Shown here one piece after another: positions 17,843-50,215 of a DNA stretch of 64,000 nucleotides. The notes beneath the pieces were generated by a model. The model saw only the letters and a list, made by a program, of their open reading frames with translations. It had not been told where the DNA came from and did not search any database. Origin of the DNA: Styela clava (taxonomy: Eukaryota); assembly GCF_964204865.1 (NCBI RefSeq), contig NC_135252.1:19840001-19904000 (forward strand), read 5' to 3'. A program made the position numbers and the translations under genes. Position 1 is the stretch's first letter. Every line of letters begins with the position of its first letter.

Positions 17843-19834
17843 TAAGGTCAATAAAATACTGTTTTCAAATGAAGTATGAGGTATTTGTGACATACGAACA
17901 ACTTTTCTTTCTTTCTATTTTTTCCAGTTTTCAGACGTATTTGTACAATATATTGTTCAAACATATTCCCGCAGAAACTAAGTTGGTTGCGATTTTTCGT
18001 TTTAAATTATTGAGTTTAATGAAAACTGGTATAACAGTTTACTGATGCTTGATTTCAAATGCGAAACGACGTGTCCACACATATTATGTGTTTTTTTTAT
18101 TTCATTTCTTCGTCAACCACGCACATGTCTACAATGCATTATTAGCCCGACCTGTTGAACTAAAAAAAAAAAATTTATATCAAAAGGATGTGCGACATTA
18201 TAAAACAAAATTGGTAGAAATCTACTTTATTGTTATTTATATGAGCTACAATATGGCATTATCCATCTATAAACTATATTGATATTAAAATTATGGTCGG
18301 TTGAAACCTTCTCACCGAATACTTGCAAATAATAGAAGAGGTTGCGCGACTTTATAGAATAGAGTTTGGTTGAAATGTACTGAATGAAATGTTGAAATGT
18401 TTTTTATTCGTATCCTAACATGATTATTGATAAATCTGTTAATGTTAAATAATCTCAGCATTACAACTATTGACAGTACAACCTGTATCAGACGATGCCT
18501 GTATTTTATGTCAAAAGTGGATGTGTGACATTATAAGCCAGTTCCGTCGACTTCTTTCTACTTCATAGGAATCTTGACACGTCGTGTACATTGTATTATA
18601 TTTACGGATACAACTGGGAGATATATGCAAGAGGGATGCACTAGTGTAGAAGTTTTGTTATTTTATCCTACACTAGCTACTGTAAAACATTCTAAGAAAT
18701 TTAAACTTACCATAACTGGTAGCTTACAATGAAAACATGTTAAAATATTATTTGAGGATTATAACCAATCAAGTCTATGCATCTGAAACATTATTTTAAG
18801 CGCCGATTCACGAATCGGCGTGCAATGTACTTTATGCTGTTTTTTGTTCTTTGTTGTTCCTTCCTTCCCCCGGGCTAAATGCGGCCCGCGATGAAAAATT
18901 GTTCGGCCCACGGAGAAGTGTATTATGTAAAATAGAAACTAATCCAGTTCGGAATCGAAGCTTATTACTAATATTGATGCTTTTGGCAAAGGTCATTAGG
19001 TCAGAAATTTTATCTTCGGCAGATTTACATTTTCAACCCGGAAGTAAAAGACCTTTGACCTGGTCGCCATCCGCACTACGACAAGTGCGGTCACTTTGGA
19101 TATGATATACGCCGATTCTTAGATCAGAGCTTAAAATAATGTTTCAGATGCATGGACTTGCTTAACGCTTAACCTTCAAGGAGTGAATATTTTAATTCCA
19201 AACCATCATTTGTGATATGTTTAAATTGTCGACATTTCTCAATTTGTAGTTTGAAGGAGGGACCATAAAAATACAGGTACTCCTGTAGTATGCGAAACAA
19301 GAAGACGGGCACCGGAACGTGGTATGTTTACCGGGTTAGATTGTCCGCCATATTGGTTCACATACTTCGGGGGTACCCATATTTGTAATCTCTGATTATC
19401 CGTTACTCACTCATTGAGTAATTAAGTAATAAGCTACAAAAGATTCTAGTTTGATGTGTTTTTTCTTCGTTAATTCCATAAATGTCTCACACAAATTGCC
19501 AAACCGTTTTGACTCAAAGATGTTAAAGATAATTCATCGATATTAGTTTTTCGTGCGATATACTTGCAATTAATACCATGGTGAACAAAATATAAATATC
19601 ATTTTTCACCCTAATAAATCTCATTTTTTTAAATAATATAATATATATATATATATTATATTATACGGAACATTAATATAGTAACGTCAATTTCACCCAT
19701 GCTCAAATAATTCACACTATCTATATAAATATAGGCTGTGCGCACTTAGATTATTTTTTTTCAACAGGTTTCGATATATAACTCATTTTAGTTGCGATCT
19801 ACTTCAGCAGCTTCATAGATTAATTAGGGTTTGC

Positions 19835-19877
19835 GCTTTGCGCAGTGGCAGTATCGTAACCAATGAGGTTTATCGAG
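19835..19877 (+). ncRNA. U4: 5' fragment of U4 snRNA (nt ~2-45), retrocopied; not a complete gene
   Basis: GCTTTGCGCAGTGGCAGTATCGTAACCAATGAGGTTTATCGAG versus metazoan U4 5' end AGCUUUGCGCAGUGGCAGUAUCGUAGCCAAUGAGGUUUAUCCGAG: about one substitution and one 1-nt gap. The rest of U4 is absent from the window. Confidence 0.9.
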
Positions 19878-19920
19878 CTATCTGTTTGATTAAAATGAAC
19901 ATCTGCTATTGTTATCATCA

Positions 19921-19943
19921 ATTGGAATACTTTGGATTGTAAG
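19921..19943 (+). other. Spliced-leader-like 23-mer ahead of ORF1
   Basis: ATTGGAATACTTTGGATTGTAAG begins ATT and ends AAG like ascidian SL exons. It resembles the Halocynthia-type SL, recalled from memory as ATTGGAGTATTTGGTTGTATTAAG (needs verification). It is not followed by a GT donor and ends 32 nt before the ORF1 ATG. Confidence 0.6.
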
Positions 19944-19975
19944 CTATTTTGGATATTCGTTCTTGGATACTGAAA

Positions 19976-21271
19976 ATGGATTACTCCGCAGCTCTTACAG
20001 GATCAATAGGGATTACAGGTAATCGCCCTCGATCGGTTGTGGCAGAGGTGAGTGATTCTATTGATATAAACCGATTTCTCTACATCTTGGGAGAAAACCC
20101 TATAACAAAAGGATATGTCGAACACCTGTCAGGAATTTTTGAAACTAGACCGAAAATTTGGTTGATATCTTTCAAACAGTTGAACCCAACAAATCCAAAT
20201 GATTCAGTTAGAGACAAATTTATTGTAGAAACGCAAAATGGCATTAAAGTCGATGGTGTAATAGTACGCTTTTTTCCACCCACAAAACCTCCAACAAGGA
20301 TTAGCATTCGCGATATCCCAGACGAATCACGACCACAAGTCGTTTTCGAAGCTCTGAATAAGGCTGGATGCGGAAAAATTAAAAACATGACCAAACTATA
20401 CTACCGAAACACTCAACTATTCAACGGATATATAGCCGTATGGATAGATGATTTTAAACAGGAAAAACTGCCCCCCTTTCTTGTCATTGACAAAGCTAGG
20501 TGCAAAACCTACGTACCCACCGAGTTGTACAATCCAACATGCATGAACTGCCTTGATACTGGTCATAATGCAAGAAATTGCCGAAATAAAACGAAATGTA
20601 GGTCGTGCAAAATTGAAGGTCACGTTCAGGCAAATTGCCCCCTAAAATCCAATGTGAGACCGAATAACATGGAATCCTGGTTTAAGGAATCGATATCCAC
20701 AAAACCTGGAATAGTATCACATGTAGGAGAAAAAGAAGATGCAATACCAAACAATAACACCACACCAGAAATAGGAGTAAACCAAATTCCAGAAGCAGTG
20801 TTCCCAACTTCAAAATCCGACACAATATCTGATACGGATTTGTTATACGAAGAAGTAAAAGATTGGTCTCTATCAGAAGACAATACTATAACAACACCCA
20901 AAAAGCGCACTCCACCTCGCAAAACAGTCCCGAAGCCTAAATTAAAACCTACATCCACAATAGGGAACACTCCAATTAGACCCCCAGTAATTGGCAAATC
21001 GTATGTAAACATGGTAATTAACGACTTCGAGATTAGAGACAGCACGTCATCATCAGTATTCTCAGACATACTTCAAAGTAACTCGGCACCGGCATACCTA
21101 GAGAACCCAGATAGCACGTATGAAACAGACCCATCACAAACACCCAGACTTGAACCTACTATGAACAAAACCGAAAAACAGATTGGAAAACGGGGAAGAG
21201 AAAATACTTCCTCGTCGACAACGTCGAATATATCACCCTCGCCAAAAAAGGGGAAAGACAATAAAACATAG
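19976..21271 (+). CDS. Retrotransposon ORF1 (gag-like nucleic-acid-binding protein, two CCHC zinc knuckles)
   Basis: CMNCLDTGHNARNC and CRSCKIEGHVQANC motifs with a low-complexity S/T/P/K tail. First in-frame ATG is 19976; the track start 19949 is a TTG. Confidence 0.92.
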   Translation: MDYSAALTGSIGITGNRPRSVVAEVSDSIDINRFLYILGENPITKGYVEHLSGIFETRPKIWLISFKQLNPTNPNDSVRDKFIVETQNGIKVDGVIVRFFPPTKPPTRISIRDIPDESRPQVVFEALNKAGCGKIKNMTKLYYRNTQLFNGYIAVWIDDFKQEKLPPFLVIDKARCKTYVPTELYNPTCMNCLDTGHNARNCRNKTKCRSCKIEGHVQANCPLKSNVRPNNMESWFKESISTKPGIVSHVGEKEDAIPNNNTTPEIGVNQIPEAVFPTSKSDTISDTDLLYEEVKDWSLSEDNTITTPKKRTPPRKTVPKPKLKPTSTIGNTPIRPPVIGKSYVNMVINDFEIRDSTSSSVFSDILQSNSAPAYLENPDSTYETDPSQTPRLEPTMNKTEKQIGKRGRENTSSSTTSNISPSPKKGKDNKT

Positions 21272-21308: not shown

Positions 21309-24300
21309 ATGACTGAAAATCTATCACAATTAAAAATAATCTCACTGAACGTAAACGGACTGGAAAAAAATTGGAATAAACTTAAAATCTTCATAACTTA
21401 TCACAACCCAGACATTATTGCTTTACAAGAAGTCCACAGAGTTAAAAGAGACGTTTCCGAGAACCGACTTCAAAACATGGGGTACAGATTATTTATTAAC
21501 TCACTGACCGACTTCGATAAGAGGGATGACCAAAGATTCTTCCAAGGCACCGCCACTGCAATAAGAGAAAACTTATGTGCAACGCACAGCTTTGAATATG
21601 TTACATTCATACCTTGTAGAGCGTGTTCGACAACAATGACGAACTTACAAACCAAAGACAAGCTATCGCTAGTAAATGTTTATGCACCTCCCAGAAGAGG
21701 CGACAGAAAAACTAGAATGTTCTACGAAAAGCTGATAAACTTAGTGAGAGAGATCAAGCATATTCAAATAATTTGCGGTGACTTTAACATGGTTCATCAG
21801 AAAATAGACGTCAGCAACCAAAACTCATTTACACTAGGGAACACAGAAATGCAATGGAAAGACTTTATACAAGCTTACAACTACATAGACACGTATAGAT
21901 ATCACTGGCCCGATAAAAGATTATATACAATTACCAGGAGAAGACAATCCCGACGAATAGATCGAATATATATTCCGTACAACATTAGTCATGAATTGAA
22001 AAATACAGAATATTTAGTAAACACCGTTTCAGACCACCACTTTGCATCACACATCACTTTCAAAAATATTAAACAAGTTAACTGGGGACGGGGAACCTGG
22101 AAAAACAATACAGCTCATTTTAGGCACGAAAAAGTCAGGTTTTTGATAAATGAGATATACAAAAAAGAAGAACAAAGAAAACACGAATATGAAATACTTG
22201 CCGACTGGTGGGACAACTTGAAGACCAAAATTAAAAAAAGCCTCCTCCAACACGGAATTAACGAAGCAAAGGTAAAGAAACAAAATGAAAGCAGGTGGAA
22301 AAATGAAATTCTAAATAGCATGAACAAGTCACCATCAAACCAAGCAATATATATACTCATTAAAAACCTAAAACAAATGGAAAAAGAAAAAGTGATGTTT
22401 AAACAAAATACAGCAAAAATCAAAGCATTAGAACAAAACGAAAGACCAACAAAATATTTCTTTGACAAATTGAAAACTAGAAGACGTAAAACCACTATAG
22501 ACAGACTACAAAACAAAGAAGGAAATTATTTAAAAACAAAAAACGAAATTTTGGAAGAAGCGCAAACATTCTATAAAACACTATGGACACAAACAACACC
22601 AGGTGAGGAAGATAGAATGGAAGAATACCTCAACATATATGGGGAAACTAAGCTTAGCACTGAAGAAAAGGAACAAATGGGGACCTTAGCTTCAAAAGAA
22701 GAACTTCTCGTGACTTTAAAACAAATGAATAACTATAAAACACCGGGACCAGACGGACTATCAAAGGAATTTTACGTTGAATTTTGGGAAATTTTGAAGA
22801 ATGACTTGCACCAGCTAGTAAACAATGCTATCGCTTTCGGCACCTTACCCACCAGTAGCAAAGAATCGATAGTCACCCTTATCTATAAAAAAGGAAATTC
22901 AAATCACCTATCTAACTACCGGCCCATATCTAACCTAAATGTAGATTTTAAACTGATATCAAAAATATTAGCTAACCGATTGAAACCTATCTTGGATAAA
23001 TATATAATGCCAACACAGAAAAGCGCAATTCCTAAACGATCTATATTTGATAATTTACGAAACGTTCAAGGAATATGGAATTATACAACAAAATGGAACC
23101 TACCTTTATATATAATCAGTTTCGATCAGGAAAAAGCTTTTGATATGGTTAACCAACGTTTTTTATTCAAAACCATGACCAAACTAAACTTCAACAAAAA
23201 TATCATTAACTTAATCAAAGAAATGTACAATCGGATATACAGCAGAATACAAATTAACGGGGCTAAAACCAATAAAATCTTTCTGACAAGAGGAATCAGA
23301 CAAGGCTGTCCATTGAGCATGGCAATGTACACCTTAGCCGCTGACCCATTGGCAAGAAAAATCATCGCGAACCAAAAGATAAAAGGATTCAACATCGGAA
23401 AATACAAAACCGTAATTGATCAATTTGCAGACGACAATACAACATACGCGCGAGACATTGAATCGATAGAACACACCTTCAACGAATTTAAGACTTACGA
23501 ATTAATAACGGGACAAAAAATAAATGAGAAAAAAACTGAAATATTATGTACTAACCAAATCGCAATGCAAAAACTTAAAACCTCGCCGTACAACAAATTC
23601 ATGAAACCAAATATAAAAGTTTTAGGCCAAATTATAGGACCCCAACAGACGGAAAAAACTTGGGATGAAATCCTCAAAAGACTTAGGAACACCCTGGAAG
23701 TTAATAAGCAGAGACAATTGACGTGGATAGGTAAATTCCAAATTTTAAATGCCTTGTGTATATCGCAGGTAATATACCACGCTAGAGTAGTGAATGTACC
23801 ACCAATCTACATACGGAAACTGAACACACTTTTCTTTGACTTCATCTGGCACCCAGAAAGCTTTCAGCTATTGGCACAAAATAAATTAACAGCCGATTAC
23901 TACAATGGAGGATTAAATGCCCCATGCATAAAAACAAAAATACAGGCATGTCTTCTGGAAAAAATAAAAACATTGAAAGCAATAACAGAACCTAAAGAGA
24001 TATGGCACGCAATAGCCCTTTATGACATTGGCACGAAGATAAAGAGAATAAATCCCAAACTTTACACCAACCAGATGCCCCATGCCCTCGAAACCCCAAA
24101 GCACTGGAAAGATTGCATTCAGTTAACCGAAAAAATAGGCATAAAAGAAGAAAAATGGACAGACATTTCTTTCAAACAAATTTACCAGACGATCTTGAAA
24201 TCAAACCAATCGGGAAGAAGAAAAGGGGAAGAAACACAAACATGCACCAATTGGAAAGAGATTCTAAGTAAAGAAAAAGACATAAAAAATATAATAACAA

Positions 24301-24827
24301 ACAAGGAAAGGGTGATATCATACAGGCTGGCGCACAATGCAATACTAAATGGAACACAAAGAAAAAGAATCAATTTATATCATACAGTAAGCGGGAAAAT
24401 GGCTATCACGGAGTGTAAATTCTGCTCGAAATCGGAGGACAACACGGAACACCTTATTAAAGAATGTCCTTTCACGTGGCGGATTTTGTATAAAATACAA
24501 AAATCTCTGAATCAGGCTCTGCAAACACATCACCCCTTTTTAAATGAACTACTTTGGCATAATATCTACTTAAAAGAAAACCGAAAAATAATATTAATAA
24601 CAGTGAATATAGTAAAAACTCAAATATACAAGGTCAAATCAATGAAGGACATGACAAACACAAAAATGAATCCCGAAGAAAGTAAAAGGATAGAAGATGG
24701 CATAGTTTCGAAAACTTTTAATAAAATGGGCTGGAGAGTAAAAAACATAGAATCACTCAGCGAAGAAATAAAACAGATAGAGAAAATTGAAAATTGGTTG
24801 GCCCAAAAAAGTGTTGCTACAAACTAA
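21309..24827 (+). CDS. Retrotransposon ORF2 (APE endonuclease, reverse transcriptase, C-terminal CCHC)
   Basis: APE motifs NVNGL, LQE, GDFN, RIDR, SDH. RT motifs PGPDG, YRPISNLNVDFK, DQEKAFD, GIRQGCPLS, FADD. C-terminal CKFC..EHLIKEC. First ATG at 21309. Confidence 0.96.
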   Translation: MTENLSQLKIISLNVNGLEKNWNKLKIFITYHNPDIIALQEVHRVKRDVSENRLQNMGYRLFINSLTDFDKRDDQRFFQGTATAIRENLCATHSFEYVTFIPCRACSTTMTNLQTKDKLSLVNVYAPPRRGDRKTRMFYEKLINLVREIKHIQIICGDFNMVHQKIDVSNQNSFTLGNTEMQWKDFIQAYNYIDTYRYHWPDKRLYTITRRRQSRRIDRIYIPYNISHELKNTEYLVNTVSDHHFASHITFKNIKQVNWGRGTWKNNTAHFRHEKVRFLINEIYKKEEQRKHEYEILADWWDNLKTKIKKSLLQHGINEAKVKKQNESRWKNEILNSMNKSPSNQAIYILIKNLKQMEKEKVMFKQNTAKIKALEQNERPTKYFFDKLKTRRRKTTIDRLQNKEGNYLKTKNEILEEAQTFYKTLWTQTTPGEEDRMEEYLNIYGETKLSTEEKEQMGTLASKEELLVTLKQMNNYKTPGPDGLSKEFYVEFWEILKNDLHQLVNNAIAFGTLPTSSKESIVTLIYKKGNSNHLSNYRPISNLNVDFKLISKILANRLKPILDKYIMPTQKSAIPKRSIFDNLRNVQGIWNYTTKWNLPLYIISFDQEKAFDMVNQRFLFKTMTKLNFNKNIINLIKEMYNRIYSRIQINGAKTNKIFLTRGIRQGCPLSMAMYTLAADPLARKIIANQKIKGFNIGKYKTVIDQFADDNTTYARDIESIEHTFNEFKTYELITGQKINEKKTEILCTNQIAMQKLKTSPYNKFMKPNIKVLGQIIGPQQTEKTWDEILKRLRNTLEVNKQRQLTWIGKFQILNALCISQVIYHARVVNVPPIYIRKLNTLFFDFIWHPESFQLLAQNKLTADYYNGGLNAPCIKTKIQACLLEKIKTLKAITEPKEIWHAIALYDIGTKIKRINPKLYTNQMPHALETPKHWKDCIQLTEKIGIKEEKWTDISFKQIYQTILKSNQSGRRKGEETQTCTNWKEILSKEKDIKNIITNKERVISYRLAHNAILNGTQRKRINLYHTVSGKMAITECKFCSKSEDNTEHLIKECPFTWRILYKIQKSLNQALQTHHPFLNELLWHNIYLKENRKIILITVNIVKTQIYKVKSMKDMTNTKMNPEESKRIEDGIVSKTFNKMGWRVKNIESLSEEIKQIEKIENWLAQKSVATN

Positions 24828-25229
24828 TTAAAAAAAATGATTAATTTACTGATTTTATGCTCAAAATTGAAAAACCATCTAAAACGGAAATGACGAAATA
24901 GGAGCCTATCAATGAGAACGGCAATAGTCATCTATTGCCATTATGTGATACGGTCTATAACTGACCAAGCTCCGAATGGGATACAGGAAATGACGGTTTA
25001 TCCCCGATCCCGTATATTATAATCTGATCCGAAAAAAAAAAAAAAAAAAAAAAGATTAATTAGGGTTATTAAAAAAAAAAAAAAAAAAAAAAAAAGATAA
25101 ATTAGGGTTATTTATTTAGACCGTAACATATAATCATTAATAATGCGCTAACAATATGTCGCGTGAACGCTCAACCATACTGGCCTTAAAATCACCGTTG
25201 TAGCCCAGCTCCTGTTACATAATGTAAAA

Positions 25230-25476
25230 AGATGTGCGACATTATGAAATGAAAATTTATAGATGTGCGACATTATGAAATGAAAATTTATAGATGTGCG
25301 ACATTATGAAATGAAAATTTATAGATGTGCGACATTATGAAATGAAAATTTATAGATGTGCGACATTATGAAATGAAAAATTTATAGATGTGCGACATTA
25401 TGAAATGAAAATTTATAGATGTGCGACATTATGAAATGAAAATTTATAGATGTGCGACATTATAAAATGAAAATTT
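25230..25476. repeat. 31-bp minisatellite, about 8 near-identical copies
   Basis: Unit AGATGTGCGACATTATGAAATGAAAATTTAT. Diverged monomers at about 18186, 18519 and 25605. Confidence 0.95.
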
Positions 25477-48985: not shown

Positions 48986-50215
48986 ATGCAGTACGTCGGG
49001 TTTGACAAAACTTTAGCTGTGAGGAAATTTCAAGAATATCTTCGCATTAAAACGGATCATCCAAACCCTGACTACGAAAGGGCGAATGAATTTCTTATAG
49101 AATATGCTGAAGAGTTGCAAGTAAAGGTAAAACTAGTTCAAATCGGAGATGGGGAAAGATCGATAGTACTGATGCTTATACCAGGAAAACAACCAGAGCT
49201 GCCGTCTATTCTTCTCAATTCACACATTGACGTAAGCTGCGCGGATTATGTCAATTGGAAGCAAGATCCATGGTCCGCGTACAAAGATGATATTGGAAAT
49301 ATTCACGGTGTCGGGGCCCAGGACATGAAATGTGTTGGTATTCAGTATTTAGAAGCTATCAGGATTTTGACACTTTTAAGAAAAGAACGTTTTGAACGGA
49401 ACATTTATATTTCGTTTATTCCTGATGAACAAATCAACGACGGTTCATTGGGAATGACATTATTCATTCAAACGCAGGAATTTAAAAACATGAATGTAGG
49501 TTTCGCTATGGATGAAGGTTTAGCCAATCCTCTGGACCAATATTCAGTATACTACGGAGAAAAGATTCCGTGGTGGGTACGCGTCAAATGTCAAGGACAA
49601 GGAGGGCACTCGTCGAATCTAATAGGAGAGTCTGCCGCTGAAAAGTTTTCTCGTGTAATAGCATCATTTATGTCTTTTCGCAAAGGTGAAATCGAAAAAT
49701 TGAAAAACAATTCCACCTTGCGAGTAGGAGATGTCACGTCCATCGAACTCACCGTGCTTGGAGGTGGAGAACGCCCAAATTCGATACCTCCTGATTTTTC
49801 AGCCACGTTTGACGTCCGAATTCCACCCTCGGTTAACTTAACCGAGTTCGAAGAGATGTTAACCGGATGGTGTCAACAAGCGGGCAAAGACGTCACACTT
49901 GAATTTTTATACAAAGGGATGTGTCAGGTGACAACTCGTAGTGACGAATCTAGTCCATGGTGGATCACTTTCACTGAAGCACTTCGAGAAAATAATCTGA
50001 AGTTTTCTAAAGAAATTCACCCCGCATTTTCAGACGGTCGTTTTCTGAGGGAGATCGGTATTCCGGTAATTGGATTCAGCCCAATGAAAAATACTCCCAT
50101 CGCCCTTTTCACATCAGATGAATTTTTGAACGAGGATGTATTTTTGGATGGTATTAGGGCATACTGTGCCGTTATTAGTGCCGTTGCTAATTTGGACACG
50201 GAGTGGGCTTGCTGA
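48986..50215 (+). CDS. ACY1: Aminoacylase-1-like M20 metallohydrolase, intronless, atypical metal site
   Basis: 409 aa with ACY1 motifs FQEYLRIKT, SILLNSHIDV, GAQDMKCVGIQYLEA, GFAMDEGLANP, VYYGE, GDVTS, GFSPMKNTP. Confidence 0.9.
   Translation: MQYVGFDKTLAVRKFQEYLRIKTDHPNPDYERANEFLIEYAEELQVKVKLVQIGDGERSIVLMLIPGKQPELPSILLNSHIDVSCADYVNWKQDPWSAYKDDIGNIHGVGAQDMKCVGIQYLEAIRILTLLRKERFERNIYISFIPDEQINDGSLGMTLFIQTQEFKNMNVGFAMDEGLANPLDQYSVYYGEKIPWWVRVKCQGQGGHSSNLIGESAAEKFSRVIASFMSFRKGEIEKLKNNSTLRVGDVTSIELTVLGGGERPNSIPPDFSATFDVRIPPSVNLTEFEEMLTGWCQQAGKDVTLEFLYKGMCQVTTRSDESSPWWITFTEALRENNLKFSKEIHPAFSDGRFLREIGIPVIGFSPMKNTPIALFTSDEFLNEDVFLDGIRAYCAVISAVANLDTEWAC

What the first reader, a model, noticed from the sequence alone, without database searches (positions are those of the whole stretch)
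19817..19978. Intact L1/Tx1 element whose 5' end is a U4 snRNA + unknown + spliced-leader-like chimera inside one TSD
Seen: after the left TSD (19817-19831) come 3 extra nt, U4 nt ~2-45 (19835-19877), 43 nt of unknown origin, an SL-like 23-mer (19921-19943), a 32-nt leader and ORF1. The TSD recurs after the poly(A), so everything integrated as one event. Known: Tx1-group Keno and the Utopia elements target U2 snRNA, NeSL targets SL genes, and mammalian U6-L1 chimeras arise from RNA joining or template switching. I know of no U4-headed full-length element. Inference, either (a) a family that inserts in U4 genes and is transcribed from the U4 promoter, here retrotransposed off-target, or (b) serial RT template jumps from the end of the element RNA onto spliceosomal RNAs.
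Basis: partly seen in the sequence, partly recalled or inferred. Interest (0 to 1): 0.9.

Follow-up and report, generated by a model that had tools for sequence, protein, structure and literature searches.

The report
U4-gene-targeting LINE, stray full-length copy
This is a complete copy of a jumping gene (an L1/Tx1-type LINE) whose family normally inserts at one exact spot inside U4 snRNA genes and is read from their promoter. This copy landed elsewhere, so it carries the first 41 bases of U4 as a tag; U4 looks like a new target for an already known kind of site-specific element.

Summary
A 5.2-kb LINE with both ORFs open lies between 14-bp target-site duplications (TSDs). Its first 40 bases (19835-19874) are identical to nt 2-41 of this genome's own U4 genes.

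It is not a three-part chimera. The "unknown 43 nt", the "SL-like 23-mer" and the "leader" form one 101-nt 5' UTR. That UTR occurs only in the nine copies of this family and matches nothing else in the genome.

- Six of nine copies sit inside U4 genes of two large U4 arrays (C4 about 20.1 Mb, C10 about 7.4 and 8.9 Mb).
- All five young U4-gene copies show, in the same orientation, a U4 promoter, U4 nt 1-41, the element and poly(A). The copy that closes each of the three occupied young genes is followed by U4 nt 27/28-139; the older copy's 3' end was not recovered.
- One U4 gene holds three copies in tandem.
- The three copies outside U4 genes, this one included, start at U4 nt 2-3, which is the U4 transcription start.

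Model (b), serial template jumps, is rejected.

The closest known relatives by behaviour are Keno (Tx1 group, U2 genes) and a U5-targeting Tx1 family. I found no U4-targeting retrotransposon in the searchable literature.

The scan had already flagged this family on another piece of this genome (s1-813320, s1-813370). Read-level checks and an RT tree with named Tx1 references could not be run.

The parts
19818..19831 (+). Left target-site duplication (14 bp).
   Evidence: The identical 14 nt recur at 25054-25067, right after the poly(A).
19832..19834 (+). Three extra bases at the 5' junction, found neither in U4 nor in the empty site.
   Evidence: Read directly from the sequence. The C9 off-target copy has 4 extra bases at the same place.
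19835..19874 (+). U4 snRNA head, nt 2-41 of the U4 gene. It is co-transcribed target sequence running from the U4 start site to the insertion point.
   Evidence: 40/40 identity to many U4 genes. The junction is identical in copies sitting inside U4 genes. Rfam U4 gives 26.8 bits.
19875..19975 (+). The element's own 5' UTR.
   Evidence: It matches only the 9 element copies genome-wide. It has no U4 similarity. The 23-mer has no array-type match: nine of 13 hits are element copies, four are scattered 3-mismatch hits.
19976..21271 (+). ORF1 (431 aa) with two CCHC zinc knuckles.
21309..24827 (+). ORF2 (1172 aa): APE-type endonuclease, reverse transcriptase with FADD, and a C-terminal Cys/His motif.
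   Evidence: Pfam Exo_endo_phos 1.2e-12 and RVT_1 2.9e-30. It aligns over residues 1-881 with human L1 ORF2p, E 6e-71.
24828..25031 (+). 3' UTR. Its ends pair and carry box C-like and box D (CUGA) motifs next to the terminal stem.
   Evidence: Fold (z -2.0). No Rfam family matches. This is a lead only.
25032..25053 (+). Poly(A) tail (22 nt).
   Evidence: The A-run length differs between copies, about 18 to 45 nt.
25054..25067 (+). Right target-site duplication (14 bp).
25071..25112 (+). Second A-run (25 nt) plus a second 17-nt copy of the target site with one mismatch. Most likely a poly(A)-only micro-insertion at the same site.
   Evidence: Similar micro-insertions lie at the U4 site of other U4 genes. 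A 42-bp slippage duplication is not excluded.

Best explanation
The window holds an off-target, full-length copy of a young L1/Tx1-type LINE family whose endonuclease cuts U4 snRNA genes at one position in the 5' stem-loop. The bottom strand is nicked at about nt 27/28 and the top strand after nt 41, which gives a 14-15 bp TSD.

Copies sitting in a U4 gene have no need of a promoter of their own. RNA polymerase starts at U4 +1, so the RNA is U4 nt 1-41, then the 101-nt 5' UTR, ORF1, ORF2, the 3' UTR and poly(A).

When such an RNA is reverse-transcribed into another U4 gene, the head is homologous to the target and is not duplicated. The tandem copies carry only nt 27-41 between them.

When the RNA is inserted elsewhere, the whole head down to the transcription start is copied in. 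This happened here and at two other loci.

Shown: the anatomy, the target site, the orientation, the TSDs, the promoter context, and where the heads start. Inferred: use of the U4 promoter, sequence-specific cleavage by the APE domain, and homology-guided 5' joining.
For: - The genome has at least 74 full-length U4 genes in arrays on C4 and C10.
- Nine copies carry the 5' end. Six of them lie in U4 genes: C4 20117041 and 20139459; C10 7399734, 7404963 and 7410181 in tandem; and an older copy, 85-90% identical, at C10 8883234.
- Each young on-target copy follows the conserved U4 upstream box at -60 to -45 and U4 nt 1-41. Each of the three occupied young genes ends in poly(A) plus U4 nt 27/28-139.
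- The three off-target copies start at U4 nt 2, 3 and 3, and none carries any U4 3' part.
- The eight young copies differ by 0.5-1.5%. The window copy and C10a have both ORFs open.
- U4 genes also carry poly(A)-only or extreme 3'-end micro-insertions at the same site.
- The off-target site here matches the U4 TSD at 10 of 14 positions, against a background of 1.6% of windows. It appears to have been hit twice.
Against:
- snRNA-type promoters normally give short, non-polyadenylated RNAs, and no canonical poly(A) signal is visible near the 3' end.
- Three of eight young copies are off-target, so specificity is loose.
- The resemblance of off-target sites to U4 is weak. It vanishes with longer probes, and one copy (C10 16.89 Mb) has no clear TSD.
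- Older 3'-end relatives, 72-90% identical, lie at seven places outside the known U4 loci and could not be inspected.
Confidence: 0.9

Rival explanations
1. Template-switch chimera. During one retrotransposition the RT jumped from the 5' end of the element RNA onto U4 snRNA and other small RNAs, as in mammalian U6-L1 chimeras.
For: The head lies inside the TSD together with the element. Extra bases at the 5' junction are typical of end-joining or template jumps.
Against: The same head-to-UTR junction occurs in all eight young copies, including those with a U4 promoter upstream and the U4 remainder downstream. The head stops exactly at the family's insertion point in U4 (nt 41), not at the 3' end of U4 as a jump onto mature U4 would give. 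The supposed extra pieces are element-specific 5' UTR.
Confidence: 0.02
2. DNA-level copy. A piece of the U4 array carrying an element was moved here by segmental duplication or ectopic recombination, not by retrotransposition.
For: The window copy is 99% identical to the array copies.
Against: The copy starts at the U4 transcription start and ends in poly(A). It is flanked by a 14-bp TSD and carries no U4 promoter and no U4 3' part. Two further loci show the same limits.
Confidence: 0.02
3. The U4 head has become a fixed part of the element, which has a promoter of its own in the head or 5' UTR. Array copies and stray copies would then be equally able to fire, and the U4 promoter would not be required.
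For: The stray window copy is one of only two with both ORFs open. The window copy's 5' UTR contains an Sm-site-like run and a GTAAG motif; one search aligns the former to the U4 Sm site.
Against: Tandem on-target copies lack nt 1-26 of the head, so the head is not an obligatory part of the DNA copy. All off-target heads begin at U4 +2/+3, as expected from the external U4 promoter. No internal snRNA promoter is known (PMC4494074).
Confidence: 0.06

Closest known systems
Keno (Tx1 group of the L1 clade; targets U2 snRNA genes; Kojima and Fujiwara 2004, as cited in PMC4494074 and PMC4640811)
   Same: An APE-type LINE inserted at one fixed position of a multicopy, Pol II-transcribed spliceosomal snRNA gene, in the gene's orientation. 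The scan also noted a U2-headed stray copy in this genome (s1-815914, not checked).
   Different: The target is U4 (nt 27-41 of the 5' stem-loop), not U2. Whether the RT is related to Keno was not tested.
Tx1 family with a U5 snRNA target (listed in Fig. 3 of PMC4494074)
   Same: It shows that Tx1-group elements have taken other snRNA genes as targets.
   Different: A different snRNA. No sequence was available for comparison.
Utopia (restriction-like-endonuclease LINE in U2 genes; PMC4640811)
   Same: It targets an snRNA gene and is occasionally inserted in tandem. Its 3' junction is precise and its 5' junction variable.
   Different: Utopia has a PD-(D/E)xK endonuclease and a single ORF. This element has an APE endonuclease and two ORFs.
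R2 and R1 elements of rRNA genes (co-transcription with the target; cited in PMC4494074)
   Same: They have no promoter of their own and rely on the target gene's promoter. Target sequence carried in the transcript helps precise joining.
   Different: They depend on a Pol I target. R2 trims its 5' end with a ribozyme, whereas here the target-derived head stays on the RNA.
Mammalian U6-L1 chimeric retrocopies (bioRxiv 10.1101/2025.02.02.635956)
   Same: An snRNA sequence lies at the 5' end of LINE sequence inside one TSD.
   Different: Those join a full snRNA to variably truncated L1 by template switching or ligation. Here a fixed 41-nt gene fragment is joined to a full-length element at the family's insertion point.

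Membership tests
Target-specific APE-type LINE of a multicopy RNA gene (Tx1-group style) | ORF2 carries an APE-type endonuclease plus a reverse transcriptase. | tested here: met
   Pfam Exo_endo_phos 1.2e-12 and RVT_1 2.9e-30. FADD at residue 706.
Target-specific APE-type LINE of a multicopy RNA gene (Tx1-group style) | More than 20% of copies are flanked by the same target sequence at the same position (criterion in PMC4494074). | tested here: met
   Six of 9 copies with a 5' end lie in U4 genes. All 6 share the same 5' position (after U4 nt 39-41) in the same orientation. The three occupied young U4 genes show the U4 remainder from nt 27/28 at the 3' end; the older copy's 3' junction was not recovered.
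Tx1 clade (phylogenetic sense) | The RT groups with Tx1L, Keno, Mutsu and Dewa rather than with L1 proper. | not testable with these tools
   No named Tx1 reference could be reached. The best homologues are 37% identical and unnamed. Only membership of the wider L1 group is shown, from residues 1-881 aligning with human ORF2p at E 6e-71.
Tx1 clade (phylogenetic sense) | ORF1 carries CCHC zinc knuckles, unlike mammalian L1 ORF1p. That this is the Tx1 pattern is my own recollection. | tested here: met
   Two CX2CX4HX4C knuckles at ORF1 residues 189-221.
Keno | Inserts in U2 snRNA genes. | tested here: not met
   The flanks are U4 (Rfam RF00015, 114-131 bits for the target genes).
U4 snRNA gene or pseudogene (RF00015) | A full-length match at or above the gathering score. 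| tested here: not met
   26.8 bits against a cut-off of 46. Only nt 2-41 are U4.
snRNA-LINE template-switch chimera (U6-L1 type) | The junction differs from copy to copy, and the snRNA is joined through its 3' end. | tested here: not met
   The junction is the same in eight copies. The head ends at U4 nt 41, the insertion point.
SL-gene-targeting element (NeSL-like) or SL-derived leader | The 5' part derives from a spliced-leader RNA gene of the host. | tested here: not met
   The 23-mer has no array-type match within 3 mismatches: nine of 13 hits are element copies, four are scattered, against 2 control hits. The 101-nt UTR matches only element copies. A more diverged relic is not excluded.

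The most novel reading that the evidence does not exclude
This would be the first described retrotransposon lineage specific for U4 snRNA genes, and it may still be active: copies differ by under 1.5% and two have both ORFs open. It would make a 5-kb polyadenylated, protein-coding RNA from an snRNA-type promoter.

It cuts the DNA that encodes the U4 kink-turn stem-loop, and its own RNA ends in a box C/D-like kink-turn motif. That leaves room for a role of the shared kink-turn protein (Snu13/15.5K) in its RNP or its targeting.
Probability: 0.12. Interest if true: 0.65.

Novelty: new member of a known kind. Interest (0 to 1): 0.4.

Why it matters
It adds U4 to the short list of snRNA genes used as safe landing sites by mobile elements. 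The lists I read give U2 for Keno and Utopia, U5 for one Tx1 family, and U1 and U6 for Dada DNA transposons.

The family offers an unusually clean natural experiment. On-target, tandem, micro-insertion and off-target products of one young family can be compared side by side:
- The stray copies mark the 5' end of the element RNA.
- The doubly hit pseudo-target hints at which bases the endonuclease reads.

It is also a caution for annotation. A snRNA fragment at the head of a LINE can be co-transcribed target sequence rather than a template-switch chimera.

Tried and rejected
- Rfam at gathering threshold gave no hit in the window. In E-value mode the apparent full-length U4 alignment is carried by the first 41 nt only. 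I therefore dropped the idea that the whole 5' UTR is a diverged or mimicked U4.
- I tested the SL-relic idea. The UTR has no other source in the genome.
- I tested T at U4 nt 36 as an element-specific marker. It is simply the majority U4 variant.
- For Tx1-versus-L1 placement I tried search for homologous proteins (27), the protein atlas (29), the representatives search (42) and the cluster look-up (43). All gave only unnamed homologues.
- The 3' UTR gave no Rfam family.
- Longer U4 probes show no resemblance to the off-target site.

Full report
**What is in the window**

A 14-nt sequence at 19818-19831 recurs at 25054-25067, directly after a 22-nt poly(A). Between the two copies lie:
- three extra bases (19832-19834);
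- 40 bases of U4 (19835-19874);
- a 101-nt leader (19875-19975);
- ORF1 (19976-21271, two CCHC knuckles);
- ORF2 (21309-24827);
- a 204-nt 3' UTR.

ORF2 has an APE endonuclease, an RT with FADD and a C-terminal Cys/His motif. It aligns over residues 1-881 with human L1 ORF2p at E 6e-71. The element therefore belongs to the L1/Tx1 group of APE-type LINEs.

**Is the head really U4?**

Rfam's U4 model does not reach its gathering score here. There is no hit, and one search gives 26.8 bits against a cut-off of 46 (local E 2.8e-4). The genome's own U4 genes settle the question:
- The same model finds at least 42 genes at 114-131 bits, in arrays on C4 (20.09-20.17 Mb) and C10 (7.36-7.43 Mb).
- Window 19835-19874 is 40/40 identical to nt 2-41 of many of these genes.
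- I counted 74 full-length U4 genes in the DNA fetched.

Past nt 41 there is no U4 signal. The stretch 19876-20000 alone gives no U4 hit. Its alignment to the rest of U4 is no better than shuffles, with 106 of 500 scoring as well.

**The other 'pieces' of the supposed chimera**

The 101-nt leader matches only nine places in the 377-Mb genome, and all nine are copies of this element at 85-100% identity. The 23-mer called SL-like gave 13 hits within three mismatches. Nine are those copies and four are scattered, against two for the reversed control. These stretches are the element's own 5' UTR. They are not captured RNAs.

**The family and its target**

Six of the nine copies with a 5' end lie inside U4 genes:
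- two on C4;
- three in direct tandem within one U4 gene on C10;
- an older copy, 85-90% identical, next to U4 genes at C10 8.88 Mb.

Each young on-target copy shows the same order of parts. First comes the conserved U4 upstream box at -60 to -45, which is shared with 72 intact U4 genes. Then come U4 nt 1-41, the element and poly(A). The copy that closes each occupied U4 gene is followed by U4 nt 27/28-139. The older C10 8.88 Mb copy shows the promoter box and U4 head, but its 3' end was not recovered. The TSD is therefore U4 nt 27/28-41, in the 5' stem-loop, always in the gene's orientation.

In the tandem trio, only nt 27-41 separate one copy's poly(A) from the next copy's UTR.

U4 genes also carry tiny insertions at the same site:
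- one has an element 3' terminus plus poly(A);
- one has a poly(A) with a short TSD;
- one poly(A) micro-insertion lies just upstream of the old copy.

**The stray copies**

Three copies lie outside U4 genes: the window, C9 16.77 Mb and C10 16.89 Mb. They begin at U4 nt 2, 3 and 3. The first two have 3 and 4 extra bases. All three end in poly(A) with no U4 3' part.

An RNA 5' end that coincides with the U4 transcription start at three independent loci is the main argument that the family is transcribed from the U4 promoter. This remains an inference, because no RNA data could be obtained.

On-target insertions do not duplicate nt 1-26. I take this to mean that the head on the cDNA pairs with the target and guides the 5' join. 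This has been proposed for co-transcribed R1/R2-type elements (cited in PMC4494074).

**Age and state**

The eight young copies differ pairwise by 0.5-1.5%. The window copy and the first C10 copy have both ORFs open. The other six have a nonsense codon or frameshifts. I only describe this.

**The off-target site**

The window's site matches the 14-nt U4 TSD at 10 positions, and only 1.6% of comparable windows do as well. Longer probes show nothing.

The C9 site shares the six bases that precede the nick in U4. I noticed this after the fact.

The window site seems to have been used twice. After the right TSD come ATT, a 25-nt A-run and a 17-nt copy of the site with one mismatch. I read this as a poly(A)-only micro-insertion like those seen in U4 genes. 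A 42-bp slippage duplication would give the same picture.

**Comparison with what is known**

[quoted passage not shown] Kojima (PMC4494074) shows a Tx1 family with a U5 target and describes Keno as a Tx1-group element.

Four full-text searches found no retrotransposon reported in U4 genes. Repbase itself could not be searched.

By behaviour this is a Keno-like element with a new target. Membership of the Tx1 clade proper could not be tested, because every homologue reached was unnamed.

**Earlier notes of this scan**

First readers flagged a 'candidate U4 snRNA-targeting Tx1-like retrotransposon' (s1-813320) and a poly(A) micro-insertion at the U4 site (s1-813370) on other pieces of this genome. 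My results agree with both.

Other notes call the genome a tunicate. They mention U2-, SL- and histone-headed Tx1-like elements, and Tx1 elements that end in a box C/D-like module. I saw such a motif at this element's 3' end but did not test it.

**Limits**

**Verdict**

The 'chimera' is a co-transcribed target head plus an ordinary 5' UTR. This is a new member, with a new target, of a known kind of element.

Noticed in passing
window 24885-25031: The 3' UTR closes with a 4-bp terminal stem. A box C-like AUGACGA flanks it on the 5' side and a box D CUGA on the 3' side, as in a box C/D kink-turn module. The same CUGAUCCG end appears in a micro-insertion of a U4 gene at C4 20152476. No Rfam match.
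   Followed up: partly
window 25230-25476: A 31-bp tandem repeat with 7.9 copies at 98% match lies about 120 bp downstream of the insertion.
   Followed up: no
window 48986-50215: An uninterrupted 409-aa ORF with Peptidase_M20 and M20_dimer domains. It is an intronless gene in an animal genome, and its origin was not examined.
   Followed up: no
L053 (C4:20152450-20152640 and 20153110-20153280): Two U4 genes of the array are interrupted at nt 26/27 by very short insertions. One is an element 3' terminus plus poly(A) without a TSD; the other is an A-rich run with a short TSD.
   Followed up: partly
L066 3734-3850 (C10:8883233-): An older on-target copy, 85-90% identical. It has a poly(A) micro-insertion in the U4 head and 16 extra bases between U4 nt 40 and the element's start, so 5' junctions vary.
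   Followed up: partly
G000 C4 20.09-20.17 Mb and C10 7.36-7.43 Mb: U4 genes form large tandem arrays, with at least 74 full-length genes in the fetched parts and spacing of 0.5-1.3 kb. There are two variants at nt 36 (T in the majority, A in the minority) and two upstream-region types.
   Followed up: partly
G000 C4:24922893, C17:1493335, C13:16224911 and 16241823, C5:24780858, C16:4636207, C8:12808326: Diverged relatives of the element's 3' end, 72-90% identical, lie outside the known U4 loci. They are either older stray copies or sister families with other targets.
   Followed up: no
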